NCBI GenBank assembly: GCA_033442325.1
Contig: JAWQFM010000028.1
Coordinates: 1-64,000 of the forward strand
From: Salpingoeca rosetta
Taxonomy: Eukaryota > Protista > Choanoflagellata
DNA: 64,000 nucleotides
Direction: 5' to 3'
The notes below the pieces were generated by a model. It had not been told where the DNA came from. It saw nothing but the letters and a program-made list of their open reading frames with translations, and did not search any database. Below, one piece after another: positions 34,522-45,494 of the stretch. The stretch's first letter is position 1, and every line of letters begins with the position of its first letter. Both the position numbers and the translations under genes were made by a program.

Positions 34522-35513
34522 CTGAGTATGTCTGTCTGTGTGTGTCTGCTTCTATGTCTGTGAAGTACTCGCAGAGCTGGCTGGCTGGAGTGAAATCAAA
34601 CAAAGGCAAGGTAAGCGGTCACCTTCAGAAGGGACGAGGTGGCGGGCGAAGACATGTCCACAGGAACCACGTACAGCATCGCGGCAGGCAAGGCGGAGAT
34701 GAGAAACGTCGAGCCCAGCGCCTGCATCCACGTATCCCAGGAGACACCGCTGCTCTTCGCTGCGCCATGATGGTGGCCGTCGTCGTGGTGATGGTGGCCA
34801 TCATCGTGATCGTGACGATGGCCGTCATCTCCATGGTGGTGCTGGTGGTGCTCGGCGTCGCCATGATCGTGATGATGGCCGTCATCTCCATGGTGGTGCT
34901 GGTGGTGCTCGGCGTCGCCATGATCGTGATGATGGCCGTCATCTCCATGGTGGTGGTGGTGGTGCTCAGCATCGCCATGATCGTGATGATGGCCGTCATC
35001 TCCATGGTGGTGCTGGTGGTGCTCGGCGTCGCCATGATCGTGATGATGGCCGTCATCTCCATGGTGGTGGTGGTGGTGCTCAGCATCGCCATGGTCGTGA
35101 TGATGGCCGTCATCTCCATGGTGGTGCTGGTGGTGCTCGGCGTCGCCATGATCGTGATGATGGCCGTCATCTCCATGGTGGTGCTGGTGGTGCTCGGCGT
35201 CGCCATGATCGTGATGATGGCCGTCATCTCCATGGTGGTGGTGGTGGTGCTCGACGTCGCCATGACCGGCATCTCCGTGACCAGCTTCTCCATGAGCGGC
35301 ATCTCCGTGGTCGGTGTGTTGATGACTGTGCACAGCATCACCATGTTCATGCTGGTGATGGTGGGCATCGCTTGCCTGGTGACCGGCGTCCTTTGATGCC
35401 GTGGTGGTCGTCGTGGCTGTCGACGCTGTCGCTGCCACCACCAACAGCAGTGCCACGGCAGCACCCGCCACCACCATCGCCGCCAATCGCCCTCGTTGCT
35501 TCATCATCATCAT
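32825..35513 (-). CDS. SLC39A7: ZIP7/KE4/Catsup (LIV-1 subfamily) zinc transporter with an expanded His-rich N-terminus
   Basis: Signal peptide, then [79 protein letters not shown], ending VIVFFE*. Confidence 0.94.
34808..35263 (-). repeat. Coding 57-bp tandem repeat x8 (HGDAEHH[Q/H][11 protein letters not shown])
   Basis: The period of 57 nt is visible directly (CCATGATCG at 34861 and 34918), and the translation shows 8 near-identical 19-aa units. Confidence 0.95.
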
Positions 35514-35729
35514 CGCTGCTCGCTTCTTGCTTCACTTCTTGCTCGTCGTCTGTCTTGCTTTCACACACACAACAAAAAACGAAAATAAAATTGCCAGTCA
35601 TCCGCGCCAAACCAAAACACCGCACACACACTCACTCATTCCACAACACACACACACACACACGCACACAACACACAAGCACGATCGCTCATCACAACAA
35701 CCACGACAGCAGCCAACTCGACGACCACG

Positions 35730-36538
35730 ATGTCCCTCCACGCGGTGGGTGAGCCGTGATCACGGCGGAGGGAGGTGGTTGAAGAGGGCAGGGAACAGCT
35801 GGCTGCTCGTGGTGTGTGCGTGCATCGCGTGCGTGGTTGCCATGATGTGGGACTGATCAGCTGGCGTTGTTGCTGTTGTTGGTGTGCACGGCAGGTGGTT
35901 GAATCCTCGCGCGCTCTGCGCAAGCACTTTGATGAGAACAAGAGCATCTCCGCCTCCTTGTACATCCGACACTATAGGGACATATCTGGCATGCTCAGCG
36001 GTCTTGGCATGGTGTGTGTCTGTCTGTCTGTTTGTCTGTTTGTCTGTCTGTGTGTCTGTGTGTCTGTGTCTGTGTCTGTGTCTGTGTGTGTGTGTGTGTG
36101 TGTGTGTCTGCGTGTCTGTGTCTGCGTGTGTGTGTCTGTGTGTGTCTGCGTGTCTGTGTCTGCGTGTGTGTGTGTGTGTGTCTGCGTGTCTGTGTATCTG
36201 TGTCTGCATGGCTGTTTGTCTGTCTTTCCGTCAATCCACGCGTACGACCATGCATCCGTTCACTCATGCATGCGTCGTTCTTGCACCCCACCCCTCCCGC
36301 ATGAGCAGGTGTTTTCTTTCGTGACAAAGGACATTGACTCCAAGATCTGCATCCTGGAGACGCACTTGGAGAAGCGAGGTAACACACACACACACGCACA
36401 CATACACACACGCACGCACACACACGCACACATACACACACGCACGCACCAGTACAGCAAGCTCTGCTTCCCCTCGATGTCCGTCAAAGCATGCTTGCTT
36501 CGTTGGCGTGCCCTTAGGGTCTCACATCTTGTTCTGTG

Positions 36539-36598
<60 letters not shown>

Positions 36599-37483
36599 CG
36601 TTTGCCTCAACCAACCACAAACAACAACCAACAACAACTTTGTTACTGCCCCAAGACACCGAAACCCTCGACGATATTGTCCTGGTAAGACGGCATCACG
36701 AGCACCTGCGTCTTTGCGTGCTCCATATGCATGCATCCAGCGCTGTGTGTTTGGCGTTGGTCGCTGTAAAGTCGTGTATTTCATGCTGATGGGGAGGAGC
36801 AACAGCAACAACAGCAACAGCAACAACAACAGCAACAACGACAACAGCAACAACAACAACAACAACACTCCTCACCTCGCATGTGTATCCGTGTCTGATG
36901 ATGCACAACCTGTTTCGCCGTGCTTGCTCGCGTTGGTGCCCCAGTTTGAGGTGAAAAACAAGTGCACCAACACGAAGAAGCCCAAGAGCGCCGCCCGCAC
37001 CCTCCTCCGTCTCCACCGCGCACTCGGTTCGGCACACAAACACAAAAGCACAAAGGCACACGAGCACGTTCCTGCAATACGCATGCCCCCGTTCAGCTGC
37101 CATTGAAGTTTGCGCTGCTTGCTCTAGTGGCATCATGCGCATTTGTTTGCAGGCATCTCACATATCACGCACCAACTCACATCTCACACACCAACTCACA
37201 TGCCCCACGTCTCACGTGACTTTATCACCGTACACGCCGCACCGCTCGCGTTGCTCTTCCTCTCCCCTCTATCGTTTGCATCAATTGCGCGCAGAGTTTA
37301 TCCACCACTTTATTGAGCGGTTGCATGCGCTGGAGCCGAGTGACAGCGCCGTCCCAGCAGCACAGGAAGCATACAGGTACGGACACGCGCGGTGTGCTCG
37401 CCATGCCGTGTGCAACGCAGCACTCGTGACAAGTGGCTGGCGCGTGCGCGTCAAGCTTGAACTGTTTGCGTCAACAACAACAA

Positions 37484-37518
<35 letters not shown>

Positions 37519-37771
37519 CAACAACACCACACACACACACACACACTTGTCTTACCTCACATCTTCCAACTTTTCATACAGACACACTCTGAGCCAGTAC
37601 CATTCGTGGATGATCCGCCAGACAGTGCAGGTTGCACTGCGGACGCTCGACAACAAGGACGCACTGCTGCTTCGGGTGACCAAGACGGAGGACCGGCCGC
37701 ACAAGCACGTGGAACCCAACGCCATCAGGTGCACACATCATGCTGCGTTTTGCATGCACGCATGCACAAGG

Positions 37772-37850
<79 letters not shown>

Positions 37851-38072
37851 TGTCTGTGTGTGTCTGTGTGTGTCTGTGTGTGGGCGCTTGATGTCAAGCA
37901 CAGCGCACGCCTGTGACAACCTCACATTTTCACACACACACACACATCAACCCTCCACATTCACATTCACACACGCACATCCTCCTGCAGGATGCTGTGT
38001 GAGGACTTGAGGAGGATCTGGGAGCATGTGCAGACCATGTTTGACGAGCACGACTTGCACGGCTTGCCATGA
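35730..38072 (+). CDS. CPTP: Ceramide-1-phosphate transfer protein / GLTP-fold lipid transfer protein
   Basis: LGMVFSFVTKDIDSKICIL, SAARTLLRLHRALEFI, AYRHTLSQYHSWMIRQTVQVALRTL, ending VQTMFDEHDLHGLP*. These match recalled CPTP/ACD11 motifs (DxxxK, RxxLRLHR). The start exon is tentative. Confidence 0.88.
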
Positions 38073-38775
38073 TGACCATACCTTCACACCTTCTCTGCTT
38101 AGTCTGCTTGCTATCTTTTCTCCTATCAACCTCTTCCTCTGTTACCCTTACGTCGTCGTCGTTGTTATTGTTGTCACTTGTGTTGGCTTGCCCTGTTATA
38201 TATTGTGCAATTGGCCGGCTGATTGATTGGTCTTTCCTAACTCCGTGCTCGTGCGTGTGACGCGTCACCCACAAATCATCACGCATGCCGCAACCACGTG
38301 TCACATGTCATCACAACCACGCTGTGCCATCAATGTTCATCGCCATGGTCTTAACAATGTGTCTCGTGTCCGTCTCGTGCCGGCATTGCCACCTCTTATC
38401 AAAGCAACACGTGTGACGTGTCACGATCACAATAAAACGATCCCCAAAATGCTGCACAAACGTCAGCAAATGTGCGTGTTTCCGTACAGCAGATTTTCCC
38501 GCCAAAATGCTTTCATCCAAGTGTTCGGCAAAGAAAGAAGAAGTAGAGAAGTGCTGTGGAGGCTCACGTAAGAAGAAGAACATATTCTTCCCCCTCATGC
38601 AGGGCAGCAGGCTGCGGTGGTGGGATTGTGATGACATGAACAGCAACGGATGAACGCGCTGTGTGCACGTCTCACATCTCACATCACCAACGACTCAAAA
38701 ACACATCTCACCTCGAGACAACTTGCTGACTTGCAGAAGGCTTGGTCACATCACCACCACCACCACCCTGCCAGA

Positions 38776-40473
38776 ATGACATCGTCAGCTCCATCGTTTG
38801 TGGGTCAGGCAAAGCCAACGTTTTGCTCTTGCGTGTGTGTGAATGGCAGCATCTTTACTGTCTTGCGCACATCACATAATATGTGAGTGAGAACAGCCCG
38901 TCAATTGTGCAAATCTTCGCAACCCGCGCTCACACTCCATAATCTGCTCTCTTCGTACACTCTGGCTGGGCTGACTTTTAACAGCTGCTGCTGAACCCGT
39001 CCATGCAGTCAAGTGCCATCGCAACCGCGCTCGCCCAGTGTCAAGCCAGCGTTCGCCTTCGTTGTGAGTGTGCGCCGCACGGTGCTGTCGTGTATGTACC
39101 ATCTACCATGACATGCAACCAGCTCAACAAGACAACAGGCCAAATGGCCAAATCGTGTTCTCAACTGTCGTCCTTCTCTCGCCTGCTCCATTTTGTTCCC
39201 CCCCCCCTCGTCGCTTACCATCTTGTACACGTGTTTGTGTGCCGCAGACACGCGAAAGATCGAGCCGGACGTGATTCGTCTCACGCGACCGCCCATGTCC
39301 TTCCTGGTTGTGACGAAAGCCGCGTCGTTCACAACCACCCAAGCAACGTGCGTACGTTGGAGAGAACCGGTAACAGACTCCTTCTGCGCCTGCACTGCGG
39401 CTACCATGCCTGTCTTGTCAATGGTCCATTAGCCTCGATACTGAGATCCCCTTGGTTGTGCATGAGCGAGGGTATCCACTTACAAGAGTTGCTTGCACAT
39501 ACCACTGTACGCACACTAACCTGCACGCGCAGGCTGCAATCCTGTGTAGCCAGCTCAAAGGCCTGCTTTGTGCTGCTCATCTCAGATGATGGCATGCTCA
39601 GCAGCGCGCAACACCAGCTCCAACAAAGGTGAACAATCATGGGTCAACGCTGTGTGTGCGTGTGTGCGTGTGTGCGTGTGTGCGTGTGTGCGTGTGTGGG
39701 CGATGAGGCGCGAAGTTGAAACCGCTTTGTGTCACATTAGTGGAGTAGATGGGTGGGGGAGCGCTCGCGGTCATCACAGCATCACATCACAGCATCACAT
39801 CACAGCATCGTCATCTGTACGCGACCACCCGACTGAGGTCACGTGCCGCCTGGTCTCGTGCCTCGCAGGTCTCACACTAGCACCTCATGTCTTGGACAGG
39901 TGGATGGGGAGATCGGCAGTTGGTGTTCGCATGTGCGTGAGTGGCGCGCAGGCCAGCAAGGTGCTGATAAACACGGCCACGTGCTCACAGCCCAGCACGC
40001 GGCAGCAGCTTCGCACCATGCTCGTTGGTCGCCAGGAGGAGGAGGACGAACGTGGCGATCGTGGAGCACAGCAGCAGCAACAGCTGGCACGCTGCCTGGA
40101 GAACACTGGTCAACTCACCCAGTCGGAGGTATGAGAAGAGAAGTGCGTCGACGTGTGGTGTGTGTCTGTGTGTGTGTATGTCTGTGTGTGGGTTGGTGCG
40201 TGTGTGTGTGTGCGTGAATGGTGAGGGAGTGAGCACAGAACCTTAGCTACGAGAGAGTATTCACATGTACCCTCTCTCTCCTGTTGCGCTCCAGGCAGCA
40301 GTGTTCTGCACTCACCTTGCTCGCTTCACTGCGCAGCCTTTACAACTGTGCGTCTCTCTCTCTCTCTCTCCGTCTCGCTCCCTGTATGCTAGGCTGGTCT
40401 CATTCAGGATGGCTTTGGATCAGTGCAGCGCTTCAGTTCTGCCACGCAGCACTCGCTGCTCGCATGCAGGTAG
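38776..40473 (+). CDS. Probable SPO16/SCRE(C1orf146)/PTD-like inactive ERCC1/XPF-fold meiotic crossover protein
   Basis: Exons 38985-39063, 39249-39347, 39533-39629, 39900-40128 and 40393-40470 splice in frame to LLLNPSMQSSAIATAL...RYTRKIEPDVIRL...SFLVV...CFVLL...LQQRWMG...LTQSEAGLIQDGFGSVQRFSSAT. Start and end are tentative, and the similarity was judged from memory. Confidence 0.6.
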
Positions 40474-40623
40474 TCATTTAGGGAGGCTGAGGGAAGGAGG
40501 GATGACTGCTTGACTGGGTGGTGCAGATGTTTAGGATGTTTCTTTGGGTGGAGGAGAGAACAACATGGCAGTGCACATGCAGTCCTTGAGGGCACACCCA
40601 AAGCTAGAACGCAGCCTCTCATA

Positions 40624-40697
<74 letters not shown>

Positions 40698-41065
40698 CTG
40701 ATTTGAATTTGGCGGCACAAGTTTGTCTGCGCAAACGGCGGAAAGAGTGCACAAAGCCATTCTCCAGCAACAACTGTGACAGCGCGGCACTGTGTCCGTG
40801 CTCTTCTTGTTCTTTCTTTGCTTGCTCTTGGGTTGCACCGGCCTTGAAGCGAATACACAACAGCACAAGCACACAAGAAGCACACACACACACACACATA
40901 CATACATACATACATACACGGATCTGAGGAAGAAATACAAGTTCCAAGAAGAGAGGGTGGTGCCATCGTGACGCAAGAAGGCGTCAGGTCCCAGCAGCAA
41001 TCGTTGGCGATCAGCACACGTCGTGGCACGTGCCTCTGGTAGCCCACGACGGCAGGCACGCGTGC

Positions 41066-43062
41066 ATGCTTGCACTGCGCTTGAGCCGGCGCCGGCTCAC
41101 CACGAGAACAGCCCTCCTGGCAGATGGCAAGCGCAACGGTCTTCCCTTCACAGGGTGCGTGTGTGTCTGCCTGTGTGCGTGCGTCTGTCTCCCTGTGTGC
41201 GTGCGAACGTGCGTGTCTCAGTCTCTGTGGCTGCTTGTCTTCTGCCTTGTCTTCTTCGTACGTTGTCTCTCCCAACGTCTCCTGTGCTTGATTGCACCGC
41301 GCTCTTCCCCTCAATTCACCTGGCACCCACCTGCACACCCCCCCCCCCTCCGCGGCTCGTCACATCGGCAGATGGATCTCGTTCAAGCAGCGCGACCCAC
41401 AAGACAAGGGCTTCTTCACCCAGAACCCTGCCCCCATCCACTCCAAGGTGCTGCTGACTCATCTGGCGATCCATGCAGCTGCACATACCATGCTCAAGAG
41501 AGCGCTCACATCCTGTGCCATGCCCCTGCCTGCAGATTCTCAGCGCCAAAGCCGATCCCCAGGAGGACGAGCACGTCGTTGGTGCGTACACACGCTTGTG
41601 CAACCGAATGCTTGCACAGCATTGCATACGTGCTGCTTCGGTGCCAAATGCTGGCTGTTCGCGTGCTGGCGCTGGGTACCCCGGCTTTCAGCACCTGCAT
41701 TTGACAGTGGCAGCATCCGACTTTGATATATCTCACCAGCACACTGCCTGCTTCTTTGTTGTGACTTGCTGAGTAGGTGTCAAGACAAACGAGCAGCACG
41801 ATGTACCACCGCGTCCAAAGACAGTGGTACGTGCCCATGCCATCACCAGCATGTGTTTCGCAGTTACATACCTCTTTCACGATGCGTGTCCATCGGTCAC
41901 ATTCCCACACTGCAACTGCATCCATTCCATGCGTGGTGCTCAGAAGAAGGAGACAGAGGCGGTTGATGTGTCGCGCGTACCGCCACCAGAACAGATCAAC
42001 GTGGCAGCGCTTCGCGAAACAATGCAGGAGGACTGGCGGAAGCTGCAAGAAGCCAACAAGCGCTTGCGGCAGTGGCCATTCGAGGTCAGGCGCATGTGTG
42101 TGTGCGTGCGTGTGCGTGTGTGTGCGTGCATGTGTGCGTGTGTGTGCGTGTGTGTGCATGTGTGCGTGTGTGTGCATGTGTGTGTGTGTGCGTGTGTGTG
42201 CGTGTGTGGCACATCTCGCTGTGCAACTGCGCGACTTGCTTTTCAAATGCATCCTCACAGCTCCAAACTGACCGCGGCCCAACCACCACCACCACCACCA
42301 CCACCGCCACCACCACCACCGCCACTATCATCCCATCAGGCCGATGTGAAAGCGCCGAAGATGCCGCTGTCCACGCGCGTCACCGTCGCCCTCTCCCTCA
42401 CAGGGAACATGCTCATCTCGGCCGCCAAATTCTACGCGTACACGCGCACGGGACACAGCGCAATGCTCTCAGAGGCCATTCACACCCTCGTCGACGTCGG
42501 AAACCAGGTGCGTGTATGTGTGCATGTGTGTGTGTGTGTGAGTGAGTGAGTGAGTGTATGTGTTAGCGTGTGCGTGTGGCTTTCTGTGGGCATATATGTG
42601 TGTGTGTGTCAGTGTGTGTCGTACGTCTCCTGATGTGTTCAAGACAATAACTATTCTTACGCCGCCTCCTCCTTCTTCATCACGCAACACACCACCACGC
42701 GACCGCTGCGACCAGGCGATCCTTGGGTACGGGCTGATGGAGGCTGAGCGCTCGCCTGACCGCAAACACCAGTACGGTTACGGGCGCGCTGCCTTCTTCT
42801 ACTCGCTGCTCACTGCCATGTCCACGTTTGGCTTCGGCGCTCTCTACACGGGGTACCAGGGTACGCAGCCACTTGTGCCGCTGTGTGTCGTGCTGTGTGC
42901 CGCTTGCTGTACTTGCAAGCTGAGAGCAAGGCGTGAGGGAGAGTCAAGCTCGTGTGTTCTTTTCAGCCCCAATTACAGTTACATCCATTTCACCACCACC
43001 ATCACCACCACGACCACCACCACCACGACCACCATTATCGTCATCACCACCACCGCCACCAC

Positions 43063-43094
<32 letters not shown>

Positions 43095-43098
43095 TCAT

Positions 43099-43145
<47 letters not shown>

Positions 43146-43165
43146 CCACCACCACCACCACCACC

Positions 43166-43211
<46 letters not shown>

Positions 43212-43547
43212 GGCGTACATTCGCTGCTACATCCGCCAACGGAGCTGTCAAGTCTTCCGGAAACGTGGGCCATCCTTGCTGTTGGTCTCGCTGTTGACGG
43301 CTTTGTTCTCCACACCGCTCTCCGCAGCACCCGGTGGCGCGCACGCAAGGAGGGCGTGTCGACGGCGCAGTGGCTGCTGTCGTTTCGTGATCCGTTCACG
43401 GTTGCGGTCGTGTTTGAGGACAGCGCTGCTGTTGCCGGCGTCATTGTTGCCGCACTCGGCATTGGCATGACACAGGTGAAAGGAAGGGGGGGGGGGGTGT
43501 TATGGGTGTTGTGTGTGTGTTGTGTGTTGTGTGTTGTGTGTTTTGTG

Positions 43548-43610
<63 letters not shown>

Positions 43611-44232
43611 GTTGTGTTGTGTCACGCGATCAACCCTCACTGCCATTTCGCACCCCTTACTTCCACCACCATCGCCACCATCATAATTAACCACGCCAGG
43701 TGACGGGCAACCCCATCTACGATTCGTTGGCGACGCTGTGCATCTCGGGTCTGCTGGCGTCCGTCTCGCTCAAACTCATCCAACTGAACAGATCCTTCAT
43801 CCTCGGACGCGTAAGCACTGGCGTCGAGGTGGAGGGAAGAGTGGGGGGAGGGACGAGGGAGACAGGGAGGAGGCAGGGATTGCTTCGCGTTGTGCATGTG
43901 CTCGTGGTTGTACATGCGTGCAGTCGTGTGCAGTTGTGTGCGGTTATGTTTGAACGTGGCCTGTCCTCACCAGGAGCGAAGATACATCCACACCCCCCCA
44001 TCCCCTTCTCTAACACCACCACCACCACCACCACCACCACCGCGCGCCAGCCTGTCGATGACAGCATTCTGTCTGGGCTGCGGCGCATCTTGAAGCGGCG
44101 GCAGTCTGTTGACGAGGTGCACAGCGAGCAGTCCCAGTGGATTGGGCCCTCCATGTTCTCGTACAAGGCCGAGGTCGACTTTGACGGCACCTGGCTCGCT
44201 GTCCAGGTAACACATCATGATGGGAAGGCGAG

Positions 44233-44276
<44 letters not shown>

Positions 44277-44630
44277 GAACATGCATATGCGTGCATGTAT
44301 GTGTGCGCGTGCGTGCGTGTTTTGCCCTGACTGTGCCGAACCAAAAACCAAGCACACAGCATTCGTTACCATTTCGAGCAACTGCTTTCCACCACCATCA
44401 TTCATCGCCACCACTAACCTACGATCCCCGCCATCCTGCAGTTGTTTGAAAAGTACCGTCCAGTGTTCCTCAACGCCGCCGTGCAGGGCCACGATGCAAT
44501 GCAGCACGTGCGTATCGTCGTGTGGTTGCATGCGCGTTTGTGTGATTTTGCGTGCGTGCTTTGTGTGCAGTCGCACATGAAAGCGTATGACTGCACATCT
44601 GCATTTGCATGTCCCTTCCTACATCCACTC

Positions 44631-44670
<40 letters not shown>

Positions 44671-44677
44671 TACACGT

Positions 44678-44714
<37 letters not shown>

Positions 44715-45494
44715 ACGTATACATGACCACCACTACGGCCGGTTCCAGGAGCTGGTGTGGCTGCTGCCGGCGTTTGCGGAAGACGTCACGCGCGTCCTCG
44801 AGAAGGAAGTCCGCGATATCCAGGTGCCGACAGCAGTCCGCTGATGGTGGTGGTGGTGACTGATAGTCGTGGTGGTGATTGGGTGGATGAAGAGCCATGT
44901 CACGTGTGCGATGTAGTGTTTGTCTTATCTTCGTTCAACGATTCACCACCTACTACCGACCGTCCTTACCACCGACCGCAACGACGACCATACACACCAT
45001 CTGGTGTGATGTGCGACTGCAACAGGCGGAGGTGCGGCGGGTGTACCCGGCGGCCGGGTTTGTTGAGATTGTGCCAGACAGCTCGCAGACGACGCTGATG
45101 GCACTCGAGTCGTTTATGAAGAAGAAGGCGTCACGCCTCGTCGAGCAATACCAGGTCAGCGGAAGGTGGGAGGGAGGAGAACGGGAAGGACGGAAAGGAA
45201 GGGCGAGAAAGCGGCGCGTGGTGTCGATGGTTGCTTGCATCGCCCATAACCGAAAGGCATCAAGCCAGCGCAGTCAACACACGCCAACACATGCCGACAC
45301 GTGACCGTTTGCGCTCATTTACCCCCGCCCTCCACTGCTCACTGTGTGCGAAGGTTGAGGCGATGTTATCCGGAGACAGTATACAGCACCACAACGACCA
45401 CTACAACCTCGGCAGCTTCTATGTTGGCATGGGCCAGTTTGAAAAGGCCGCCACCCAATTCCAAATCTGCCAGGACCAGCGCGAGAGCCTCCTC

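What the first reader, a model, noticed from the sequence alone, without database searches (positions are those of the whole stretch)
38776..40473. Cryptic SPO16/SCRE/PTD-like meiotic crossover gene, invisible in the ORF track
Seen: five small exons with GT/AG boundaries join in frame to LLLNPSMQSSAIATALAQCQASVRLRYTRKIEPDVIRLTRPPMSFLVVT...CFVLLISDDGMLSSAQHQLQQRWMGRSAVGVRMCVSGAQASKVLINTA...LTQSEAGLIQDGFGSVQRFSSATQHSLL. Recalled, not searched: this is colinear with mammalian C1orf146/SCRE (SLKSYEVATAL..KVRY...AFLL...SFLVL...IQQRFLG), and the FGSVQRFSSAT segment resembles the HhH-type tail of plant PTD/ERCC1-like proteins. Established: Spo16/SCRE/PTD pairs with Zip2/SHOC1 in the ZMM class I crossover pathway and diverges quickly, so it is easily missed. 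Inference: this organism has a Zip2-Zip4-Spo16 module, possibly with an HhH tail longer than in the mammalian protein.
Basis: partly seen in the sequence, partly recalled or inferred. Interest (0 to 1): 0.8.

Follow-up and report, generated by a model that had tools for sequence, protein, structure and literature searches.

The report
Unannotated ERCC1-like gene, possibly SPO16
A small, weakly expressed, seven-exon gene of the choanoflagellate Salpingoeca rosetta, which the public annotation truncates to a 101-residue "hypothetical protein", really encodes about 220 residues that look like a non-catalytic ERCC1-type partner protein, perhaps the meiotic crossover factor SPO16, though that identity could not be proven here.

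Summary
The window is Salpingoeca rosetta scaffold GL832979.1. The fourth (40128>40393) rests on a depth step and the NCBI model.

- A 24-nt first coding exon (ATG at 38776) splices to 38985.
The donor at 40470 is used and a last exon (40722-40779) adds 19 residues.
- There is a 5'UTR intron (38568-38736).
- The product is 220 aa.
- The gene is not fully invisible. NCBI holds a truncated two-exon model, PTSG_08919 (101 aa).

- No piece of the protein matches Pfam (SCRE, PND, Rad10, HHH) or any PDB chain.
- HMMER of the largest exon against 1.84 billion representatives finds only itself.
- The only positive signal is the protein-language-model neighbours of PTSG_08919. These are ERCC1 (0.90), a FAAP24-like cluster (0.87) and EME1 (0.85). 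Once those families are skipped, C1orf146/SCRE is first (0.80).

The whole spliced protein has no reference, so it could not be given to Pfam or profile searches.

My estimates: ERCC1-like superfamily about 0.8, SPO16 orthologue about 0.45, FAAP24-like about 0.2.

The parts
38495..38507 (+). E2F-type site TTTCCCGCCAAAA, just upstream of or within the first (non-coding) exon
   Evidence: It is the only match in the 64 kb window at up to 1 mismatch, and none of 100 shuffles gave a match. Its function is inferred, not tested.
38557..38567 (+). 3' end of a non-coding first exon (its start is not mapped)
   Evidence: In X16, 6 reads starting at 38737 carry 11-12 loose letters that equal 38557-38567. 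A GTAAGA donor follows.
38568..38736 (+). 5'UTR intron, 169 nt, GT..AG
   Evidence: Inferred from the loose ends and the sequence.
38737..38799 (+). Exon carrying the start codon (ATG at 38776, 8 codons)
   Evidence: Joint 38799>38985 is seen in X16 (2 reads plus 6 loose-end reads), X18 (3 reads) and an X4 contig.
38985..39063 (+).
   Evidence: Joints on both sides; in frame.
39248..39347 (+). Coding exon 3
   Evidence: Joint 39063>39248 (X18 and an X4 contig); joint 39347>39533 (X4 contig only).
39533..39628 (+). Coding exon 4
   Evidence: Joint 39628>39900 in X16, X18 and an X4 contig.
39900..40128 (+). Coding exon 5 (end of the N-terminal domain, Q/E-rich linker, start of the helical tail)
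   Evidence: Depth 5.2x in X18. It is part of NCBI model PTSG_08919 from 39904.
40168..40301 (+). Probable alternative intron (134 nt, GT..AG). The donor at 40128 is skipped, so the frame stops at TGA 40131-40133 and gives a 177-aa product without the tail
   Evidence: X4 contig record 6 holds 39898-40150, then 31 letters, then 40316-40467. The only GT..AG solution that removes 134 nt is 40168-40301. This is inferred, because the tool dropped the joint as lying in a repeat.
40393..40469 (+). Coding exon 6
   Evidence: X18 depth resumes at 40393. The junction with exon 5 is the same as in PTSG_08919. The donor at 40470 is used (joint 40469>40722).
40722..40779 (+).
   Evidence: Joint 40469>40722 in X18 (1 read, 47 nt on the shorter side) and an X4 contig (150 nt on the shorter side); translation.
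40780..40869 (+). 3'UTR (at least this far)
   Evidence: X4 contig record 6 runs to 40869, and X17/X18 have depth to about 40938.

Best explanation
This is a real, low-expressed, seven-coding-exon gene of Salpingoeca rosetta. NCBI annotates it only as the truncated PTSG_08919. It encodes a 220-aa, basic (pI 9.4) protein in three parts. Residues 1 to about 126 form an N-terminal domain with alternating hydrophobic strands and helices. Residues about 127-161 are a Q/E-rich linker. Residues 162-220 are a helical tail of about 59 aa. I read it as a non-catalytic ERCC1-type subunit. Such a subunit is a nuclease-like domain without the ERK catalytic motif, followed by helices that are degenerate helix-hairpin-helix elements. 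Most likely it is the choanoflagellate counterpart of Spo16/SCRE(C1orf146)/PTD. [quoted passage not shown] The pair would bind branched recombination intermediates without cutting them. Together with ZIP4/TEX11 it would stabilise crossover-designated intermediates (class I crossovers). What is shown here: gene structure, transcription, strand, most junctions, and absence of an ERK motif. What is inferred: the fold, the family, the partner and the meiotic role.
For: Gene reality: RNA-seq joints and strand, in-frame 220-aa product, and partial agreement with the NCBI model. Superfamily: the ESM-Atlas feature neighbours of PTSG_08919 (residues 102-201 of the full protein) all lie in one superfamily. 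They are ERCC1 Rad10+HHH_5 at 0.90, a PND/HHH (FAAP24-like) cluster at 0.87, EME1-MUS81_C at 0.85, and further Rad10 and ERCC4 clusters. With those families skipped, the first named neighbour is 'Chromosome 1 open reading frame 146', PF15162 SCRE, at 0.80. A plant SCRE-bearing cluster is third at 0.77. That the family named beforehand comes up first is unlikely for an unrelated protein. There is no ERK or GDxnERK motif, as expected for a non-catalytic partner. Size and layout match Spo16/SPO16, which have a central domain plus a short HhH-type domain (PMC6357729, PMC5859969). C1orf146 is reported in almost all metazoans (PMC6357729), PTD in plants and Spo16 in yeast (PMC5859969), so a choanoflagellate orthologue is expected. 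Unchecked scan notes list SHOC1-like, ZIP4/TEX11-like, M1AP-like, HEI10 and CNTD1-like genes in this genome. A unique perfect E2F-type site sits at the promoter, and scan notes report the same for the ZIP4/DMC1, SPO11/PCH2 and TERB1-like genes. From memory only, not tested: a 'QQR-aromatic-hydrophobic-G' motif and an 'ATAL' helix lie at the places where I recall them in human C1orf146.
Against: No statistical sequence match to any family. PDB sequence searches gave nothing relevant. HMMER of exon 5 against 1.84 billion representatives found only itself and a spurious repeat protein. The Atlas scores are at or below the level where shuffled proteins sometimes score (0.9 in 4-10% of cases), and the shared-feature count (162) is below what is typical for same-family hits. 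For the half that could be tested, ERCC1 and FAAP24-like clusters score higher than SCRE. AF2 models of PTSG_08919 (pLDDT 59) and of the tail (pLDDT 71, with the last two expected helices fused into one) gave no HhH or ERCC1 match by Foldseek or VIA-align. The gene is expressed in cultures of unknown state, so meiosis specificity is not shown.
Confidence: 0.45

Rival explanations
1. It is the FAAP24 orthologue. FAAP24 is the ERCC1-like partner of the degenerate ERCC4-(HhH)2 C-terminus of FANCM, and it targets the Fanconi/FANCM complex to stalled forks in dividing cells.
For: A cluster carrying PND (PF17949) and HHH families is the third-nearest Atlas neighbour (0.87), above SCRE at 0.80. The 59-aa tail is long enough for a full (HhH)2 as in FAAP24, whereas mammalian SPO16 has only three helices (PMC6357729). 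Transcripts are present in ordinary culture RNA. The E2F-type promoter site fits an S-phase repair gene equally well. Unchecked scan notes report Fanconi core-like genes in this genome.
Against: No PF17949 hit for any piece. No match to the FAAP24 chains in PDB. Whether S. rosetta FANCM keeps the ERCC4-like C-terminus is unknown.
Confidence: 0.2
2. It is an ERCC1-superfamily protein but orthologous to none of SPO16, FAAP24, ERCC1 or EME1. It would be a lineage-specific, fast-evolving paralogue with another XPF-family partner.
For: The Atlas neighbours are spread over ERCC1, FAAP24-like, EME1 and ERCC4 clusters with no clear winner. It is a singleton in a library of 1.84 billion representatives.
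Against: Known small ERCC1-like partners in holozoans are few. A SHOC1-like gene (unchecked note) would need a partner, and no other candidate is known.
Confidence: 0.15
3. It is canonical ERCC1 (Rad10) or EME1 of S. rosetta.
For: The first Atlas neighbour is an ERCC1 isoform cluster at 0.90.
Against: ERCC1's central domain is strongly conserved, yet pieces covering nearly all of this protein give no PF03834 hit at E<=10 and no ERCC1 chain in PDB. EME1 proteins are much longer and carry PF21292, which was not hit.
Confidence: 0.03
4. It is an orphan protein unrelated to the ERCC1/XPF superfamily, or a low-level spliced transcript with no conserved protein function. On this reading the resemblance is composition and chance.
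For: All sequence and fold tests were blank. Atlas scores of 0.8-0.9 occur with shuffled proteins. The protein is rich in Q, S, A and L. Read depth is only 1-5x, and an isoform that stops early exists.
Against: The Atlas neighbours fall in exactly the superfamily proposed beforehand, and SCRE is first once the larger families are skipped. Six canonical introns keep a 220-codon frame open.
Confidence: 0.15

Closest known systems
SPO16 / SCRE / C1orf146 (animals), PTD (plants), Spo16 (yeast); Pfam PF15162 SCRE
   Same: Small size (180-260 aa). An N-terminal nuclease-like domain without catalytic residues, then C-terminal helices. Extreme divergence, so that homologues are missed by ordinary searches (PMC5859969, PMC6357729). 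It is the first named Atlas neighbour once ERCC1, HhH and EME1 families are skipped. Scan notes report the expected partner genes in this genome.
   Different: No PF15162 hit with any piece. There is a Q/E-rich linker of about 35 aa. The 59-aa tail is longer than the three-helix tail described for mouse SPO16. Meiotic expression and SHOC1 binding are untested.
FAAP24 (Pfam PF17949 PND plus HhH)
   Same: About 215 aa with the same two-domain layout and a full-length HhH-type tail. Non-catalytic. The Atlas neighbour scores 0.87.
   Different: No PF17949 hit and no match to FAAP24 chains in PDB. The FANCM partner domain has not been shown in this organism.
ERCC1 / Rad10 (PF03834 plus HHH_5)
   Same: Nearest Atlas neighbour for the C-terminal half (0.90). 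Same superfamily architecture.
   Different: The conserved Rad10 central domain is not detectable. The protein is shorter.

Membership tests
SPO16/SCRE/PTD (PF15162) | Match to the family profile PF15162 SCRE | tested here: inconclusive
The whole 220-aa product could not be scanned because it has no reference, and HMMER's filters drop weak short hits. The ESM-Atlas puts SCRE clusters first and third once ERCC1/HhH/EME1 families are skipped (0.80 and 0.77); this is a lead only.
SPO16/SCRE/PTD (PF15162) | ERCC4/XPF-type nuclease-like fold in the N-terminal domain, without catalytic residues | not testable with these tools
   The domain is split over five exons and no contiguous reference exists. 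Only the absence of an ERK / GDxnERK motif was checked, and it is absent.
SPO16/SCRE/PTD (PF15162) | C-terminal HhH-type helical domain | tested here: inconclusive
   No Pfam HHH family and no PDB hit for the tail. The AF2 model is all-helical (pLDDT 71) but gives no HhH match by Foldseek or VIA-align. Atlas neighbours of the C-terminal half carry HHH_5, HHH_2 and Rad10.
SPO16/SCRE/PTD (PF15162) | [quoted passage not shown] | not tested
   The partner gene is known here only from an unchecked scan note. No co-folding tool or remaining structure job was available.
SPO16/SCRE/PTD (PF15162) | Meiosis-specific expression | tested here: inconclusive
   Depth is 1-5x in three RNA runs of unknown culture state. 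An E2F-type site lies at the promoter, as noted for other meiotic genes of this genome but also for S-phase genes.
FAAP24 (PF17949 PND) | Match to PF17949 or to solved FAAP24 chains | tested here: inconclusive
   No hit with any piece. An Atlas cluster with PND in 24% of members scores 0.87. The whole protein was not scanned.
ERCC1/Rad10 (PF03834) | Conserved Rad10 central domain | tested here: not met
   Pieces covering residues 9-57, 79-126 and 102-201 give no PF03834 hit at E<=10 and no ERCC1 chain in PDB. A true ERCC1 would be expected to hit even in 50-aa pieces.
Active XPF/MUS81 nucleases (PF02732 ERCC4) | GDxnERKxxxD catalytic motif | tested here: not met
   No ERK anywhere in the 220 aa, and no PF02732 hit.

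The most novel reading that the evidence does not exclude
This is the pre-metazoan SPO16, and it keeps a complete ERCC1-type (HhH)2 tail, intermediate between plant PTD and the shortened animal SCRE. With the SHOC1-like, ZIP4/TEX11-like and M1AP-like genes, it would show that the whole ZZS crossover module predates animals. It may also be driven by an E2F-type promoter element shared with DMC1, ZIP4 and SPO11, in an organism where mating can be induced and genes edited.
Probability: 0.3. Interest if true: 0.5.

Novelty: new member of a known kind. Interest (0 to 1): 0.35.

Why it matters
The finding corrects a public gene model: PTSG_08919 goes from 101 aa to 220 aa, with five more coding exons. 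[quoted passage not shown] S. rosetta can be induced to mate and can be edited, so class I crossover control could then be studied in a unicellular holozoan. The family is known in yeast, plants and nearly all animals, so a choanoflagellate member is expected rather than surprising. The value lies in annotation and experimental tractability, not in a new principle.

Tried and rejected
These attempts were blank or gave only chance matches:
The only hit was a chance NACHT helical domain at E 0.15.
- PDB sequence searches with exons 3, 5 and 6, PTSG_08919, the tail, both reader strings, and a profile of exons 2+4. The only matches were chance ones (FixL, Vibrio endonuclease I).
- Word search with exon 5 and with the exon-3 ORF.
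- Full HMMER with exon 5 against 1.84 billion representatives. It found only PTSG_08919 and a spurious repeat protein.
- ESM-Atlas with exon 5 alone: no usable hit.
- Two metagenome scans, one with exon 5 and one with the neighbouring cation-efflux exon, hoping for a wild relative with synteny.
- AF2 of PTSG_08919 (pLDDT 59, unusable).
- AF2 of the tail (pLDDT 71), followed by Foldseek against PDB (one chance hit, E 5.7) and VIA-align wide (best Z 4.8, unrelated helical proteins).
- The fold search 'atlas' library did not answer.
- A check of whether the three 184-185-nt introns are copies of one another: they are not.

I tried an alignment trick to join exons into one profile. It works only for exons 2 and 4, which happen to share a frame with no stop between them, and the profile kept the intron-encoded columns.

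Full report
**Where we are.** Window 34904-45473 is 100% identical to scaffold GL832979.1 of GCA_000188695.1, Salpingoeca rosetta (the organism name comes from the cluster record and from PMC11061109). The neighbours are a GLTP-domain gene upstream and a cation-efflux/TPR gene downstream. Both are on the + strand.

**Checking the observation.** I laid three raw stranded RNA-seq runs (X16-X18) and the Logan contigs of a run from another study (X4) on 38300-41000.
- Listed GT..AG joints are 38799>38985, 39063>39248, 39347>39533 (X4 contig only), 39628>39900 and 40469>40722.
- All read pairs have the first mate on the minus strand, as does the well-expressed upstream gene, so the RNA is on the + strand.
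- Depth is low, 1-5x against about 30x for the neighbour.
- X18 covers all exons. X16 and X17 cover mainly the 5' part.

**The revised gene.**
- The ATG at 38776 lies in a separate exon (38737-38799) that contributes eight codons and splices to 38985.
- In X16, six reads starting at 38737 carry loose letters equal to 38557-38567, which is followed by GTAAGA. This gives a 169-nt 5'UTR intron and a further non-coding exon.
The joint 40469>40722 adds 19 codons, ending at TGA 40777-40779.
- The product is 220 aa, pI 9.4, rich in Q, S, A and L.

**The one junction not listed.** The joint 40128>40393 was not reported. Three things support it. X18 depth runs 5.2x, then 0.26, 0 and 0.09, then 3.0x across the proposed intron. 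The frame stays open. NCBI's own model uses the same junction.

**An alternative isoform.** X4's contig runs through the donor at 40128 to 40150, then holds 31 letters, then resumes at 40316. The only GT..AG solution that removes 134 nt is an intron at 40168-40301. That isoform stops at TGA 40131 and would give 177 aa without the tail. This is inferred.

**Annotation status.** HMMER of exon 5 against 1.84 billion representatives found one true hit, a 101-aa protein. This is PTSG_08919 / XP_004990304.1 / F2UL29, a 'hypothetical protein' that forms a singleton cluster with no Pfam family. It corresponds to 39904-40128 plus 40393-40473. The gene is therefore half-annotated, not invisible. The model misses five coding exons and has a false stop. 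No paper mentions it.

**What is it? Sequence tests.** Nothing relevant came from Pfam on any piece:
- the five exons, PTSG_08919 and the complete 59-aa tail;

Eight PDB sequence searches also gave nothing relevant. Word searches and two metagenome scans found no relatives. The claimed colinearity with C1orf146 and the 'HhH-type' tail are therefore not statistically demonstrable from the pieces.

**What is it? Fold tests.** The N-terminal domain is cut by five introns and has no contiguous reference. I did not type the long spliced sequence, so the decisive whole-protein Pfam, HHpred and AF2 tests were left out. AF2 of PTSG_08919 was poor (pLDDT 59). AF2 of the tail gave helices only (pLDDT 71), with the last two expected helices fused. 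It found nothing by Foldseek or VIA-align.

**The one positive signal.** The ESM-Atlas feature neighbours of PTSG_08919 (the C-terminal 100 residues) all belong to one superfamily:
- ERCC1 (Rad10+HHH_5), 0.90;
- a cluster with PND/HHH families (FAAP24-like), 0.87;
- EME1-MUS81_C, 0.85;
- further Rad10 and ERCC4 clusters.

When these families are skipped, the first named neighbour is 'Chromosome 1 open reading frame 146' (PF15162 SCRE, 0.80). A plant cluster with SCRE is third at 0.77. These scores are in the range that shuffled proteins sometimes reach. However, the hits fall in exactly the superfamily, and then the family, that was named in advance. I take this as fair evidence for the ERCC1-like superfamily (about 0.8) and as weak evidence about which member it is.

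**Which member?**
- ERCC1 itself is excluded in practice. Its central domain is well conserved and should have hit PF03834 even in 50-aa pieces.
- EME1 is much larger.
- SPO16 and FAAP24 remain. Both are about 200-aa non-catalytic partners.

For SPO16:
- The family is reported in nearly all animals (PMC6357729), in plants as PTD and in yeast (PMC5859969). It diverges so fast that even yeast orthologues escape HHsearch (PMC5859969).
- The scan's unchecked notes list SHOC1-like, ZIP4/TEX11-like, M1AP-like, HEI10 and CNTD1-like genes in this genome, and a SHOC1 needs a partner.
- From memory only, two short motifs sit where I recall them in human C1orf146.

For FAAP24:
- The tail is long enough for a full (HhH)2.
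- The FAAP24-like cluster scores above SCRE for the half tested.
- Transcripts occur in ordinary cultures.
- Scan notes mention Fanconi core-like genes.

My split is: SPO16 0.45, FAAP24 0.2, other ERCC1-like 0.15, canonical ERCC1 or EME1 0.03, not ERCC1-like 0.15.

**Mechanism if SPO16 (inferred by analogy).** The protein lacks the ERK catalytic motif. [quoted passage not shown] The pair would bind D-loops and Holliday junctions without cutting them. With ZIP4/TEX11 it would stabilise crossover-designated intermediates (PMC5859969, PMC6411835, PMC6357729).

**Promoter.** A perfect TTTCCCGCCAAAA lies at 38495-38507, between the upstream gene's 3' end and the first exon. It is the only such site in the 64 kb window, and no shuffle produced one. 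Scan notes report similar E2F-type sites at ZIP4/DMC1, SPO11/PCH2 and a TERB1-like gene, but also at S-phase genes. The site therefore fits a DNA-metabolism gene and does not separate the two readings.

**Verdict.** This is a new member of a known kind and a useful annotation fix, of modest interest.

Noticed in passing
window 38495-38507: A perfect E2F-type site, TTTCCCGCCAAAA, at the gene's promoter. It is the only match in the 64 kb window and no shuffle produced one. An ATG (38507-38509) overlaps its 3' end. If transcribed, that ATG would open an out-of-frame upstream reading frame.
   Followed up: partly
window 40129-40392: An X4 transcript contig skips the donor at 40128 and seems to use an alternative intron at 40168-40301, whose donor lies inside a (GT)n run. 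The frame then stops at TGA 40131, giving a tail-less 177-aa product or a non-productive isoform.
   Followed up: partly
window 38800-39532: The first three coding introns are 185, 184 and 185 nt long but are not similar in sequence. The later three are 271, 264 and 252 nt.
   Followed up: yes
window 40129-40721: Intron 5 starts with an interrupted GT-rich run (40151-40222). Intron 6 holds a 72-nt (CA)n run near its 3' end (about 40626-40697). This fits the scan's separate note on GT/CA-armed introns in this genome.
   Followed up: no
window 39904-40473 (L001 5001-5570): NCBI/UniProt model PTSG_08919 (XP_004990304.1, F2UL29, 101 aa) is a truncated version of this gene. It has a false start at an internal Met and a false stop from intron read-through.
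   Followed up: yes
window 38300-38480: The upstream GLTP-domain gene is expressed about 10-fold higher. Its 3'UTR ends only some tens of bases before the E2F-type site, so the intergenic promoter is very short.
   Followed up: no
window 34782-35265: A tandem repeat with a period of about 57 nt and 94-97% identity between copies appeared as self-hits when the NCBI locus was aligned to the window.
   Followed up: no
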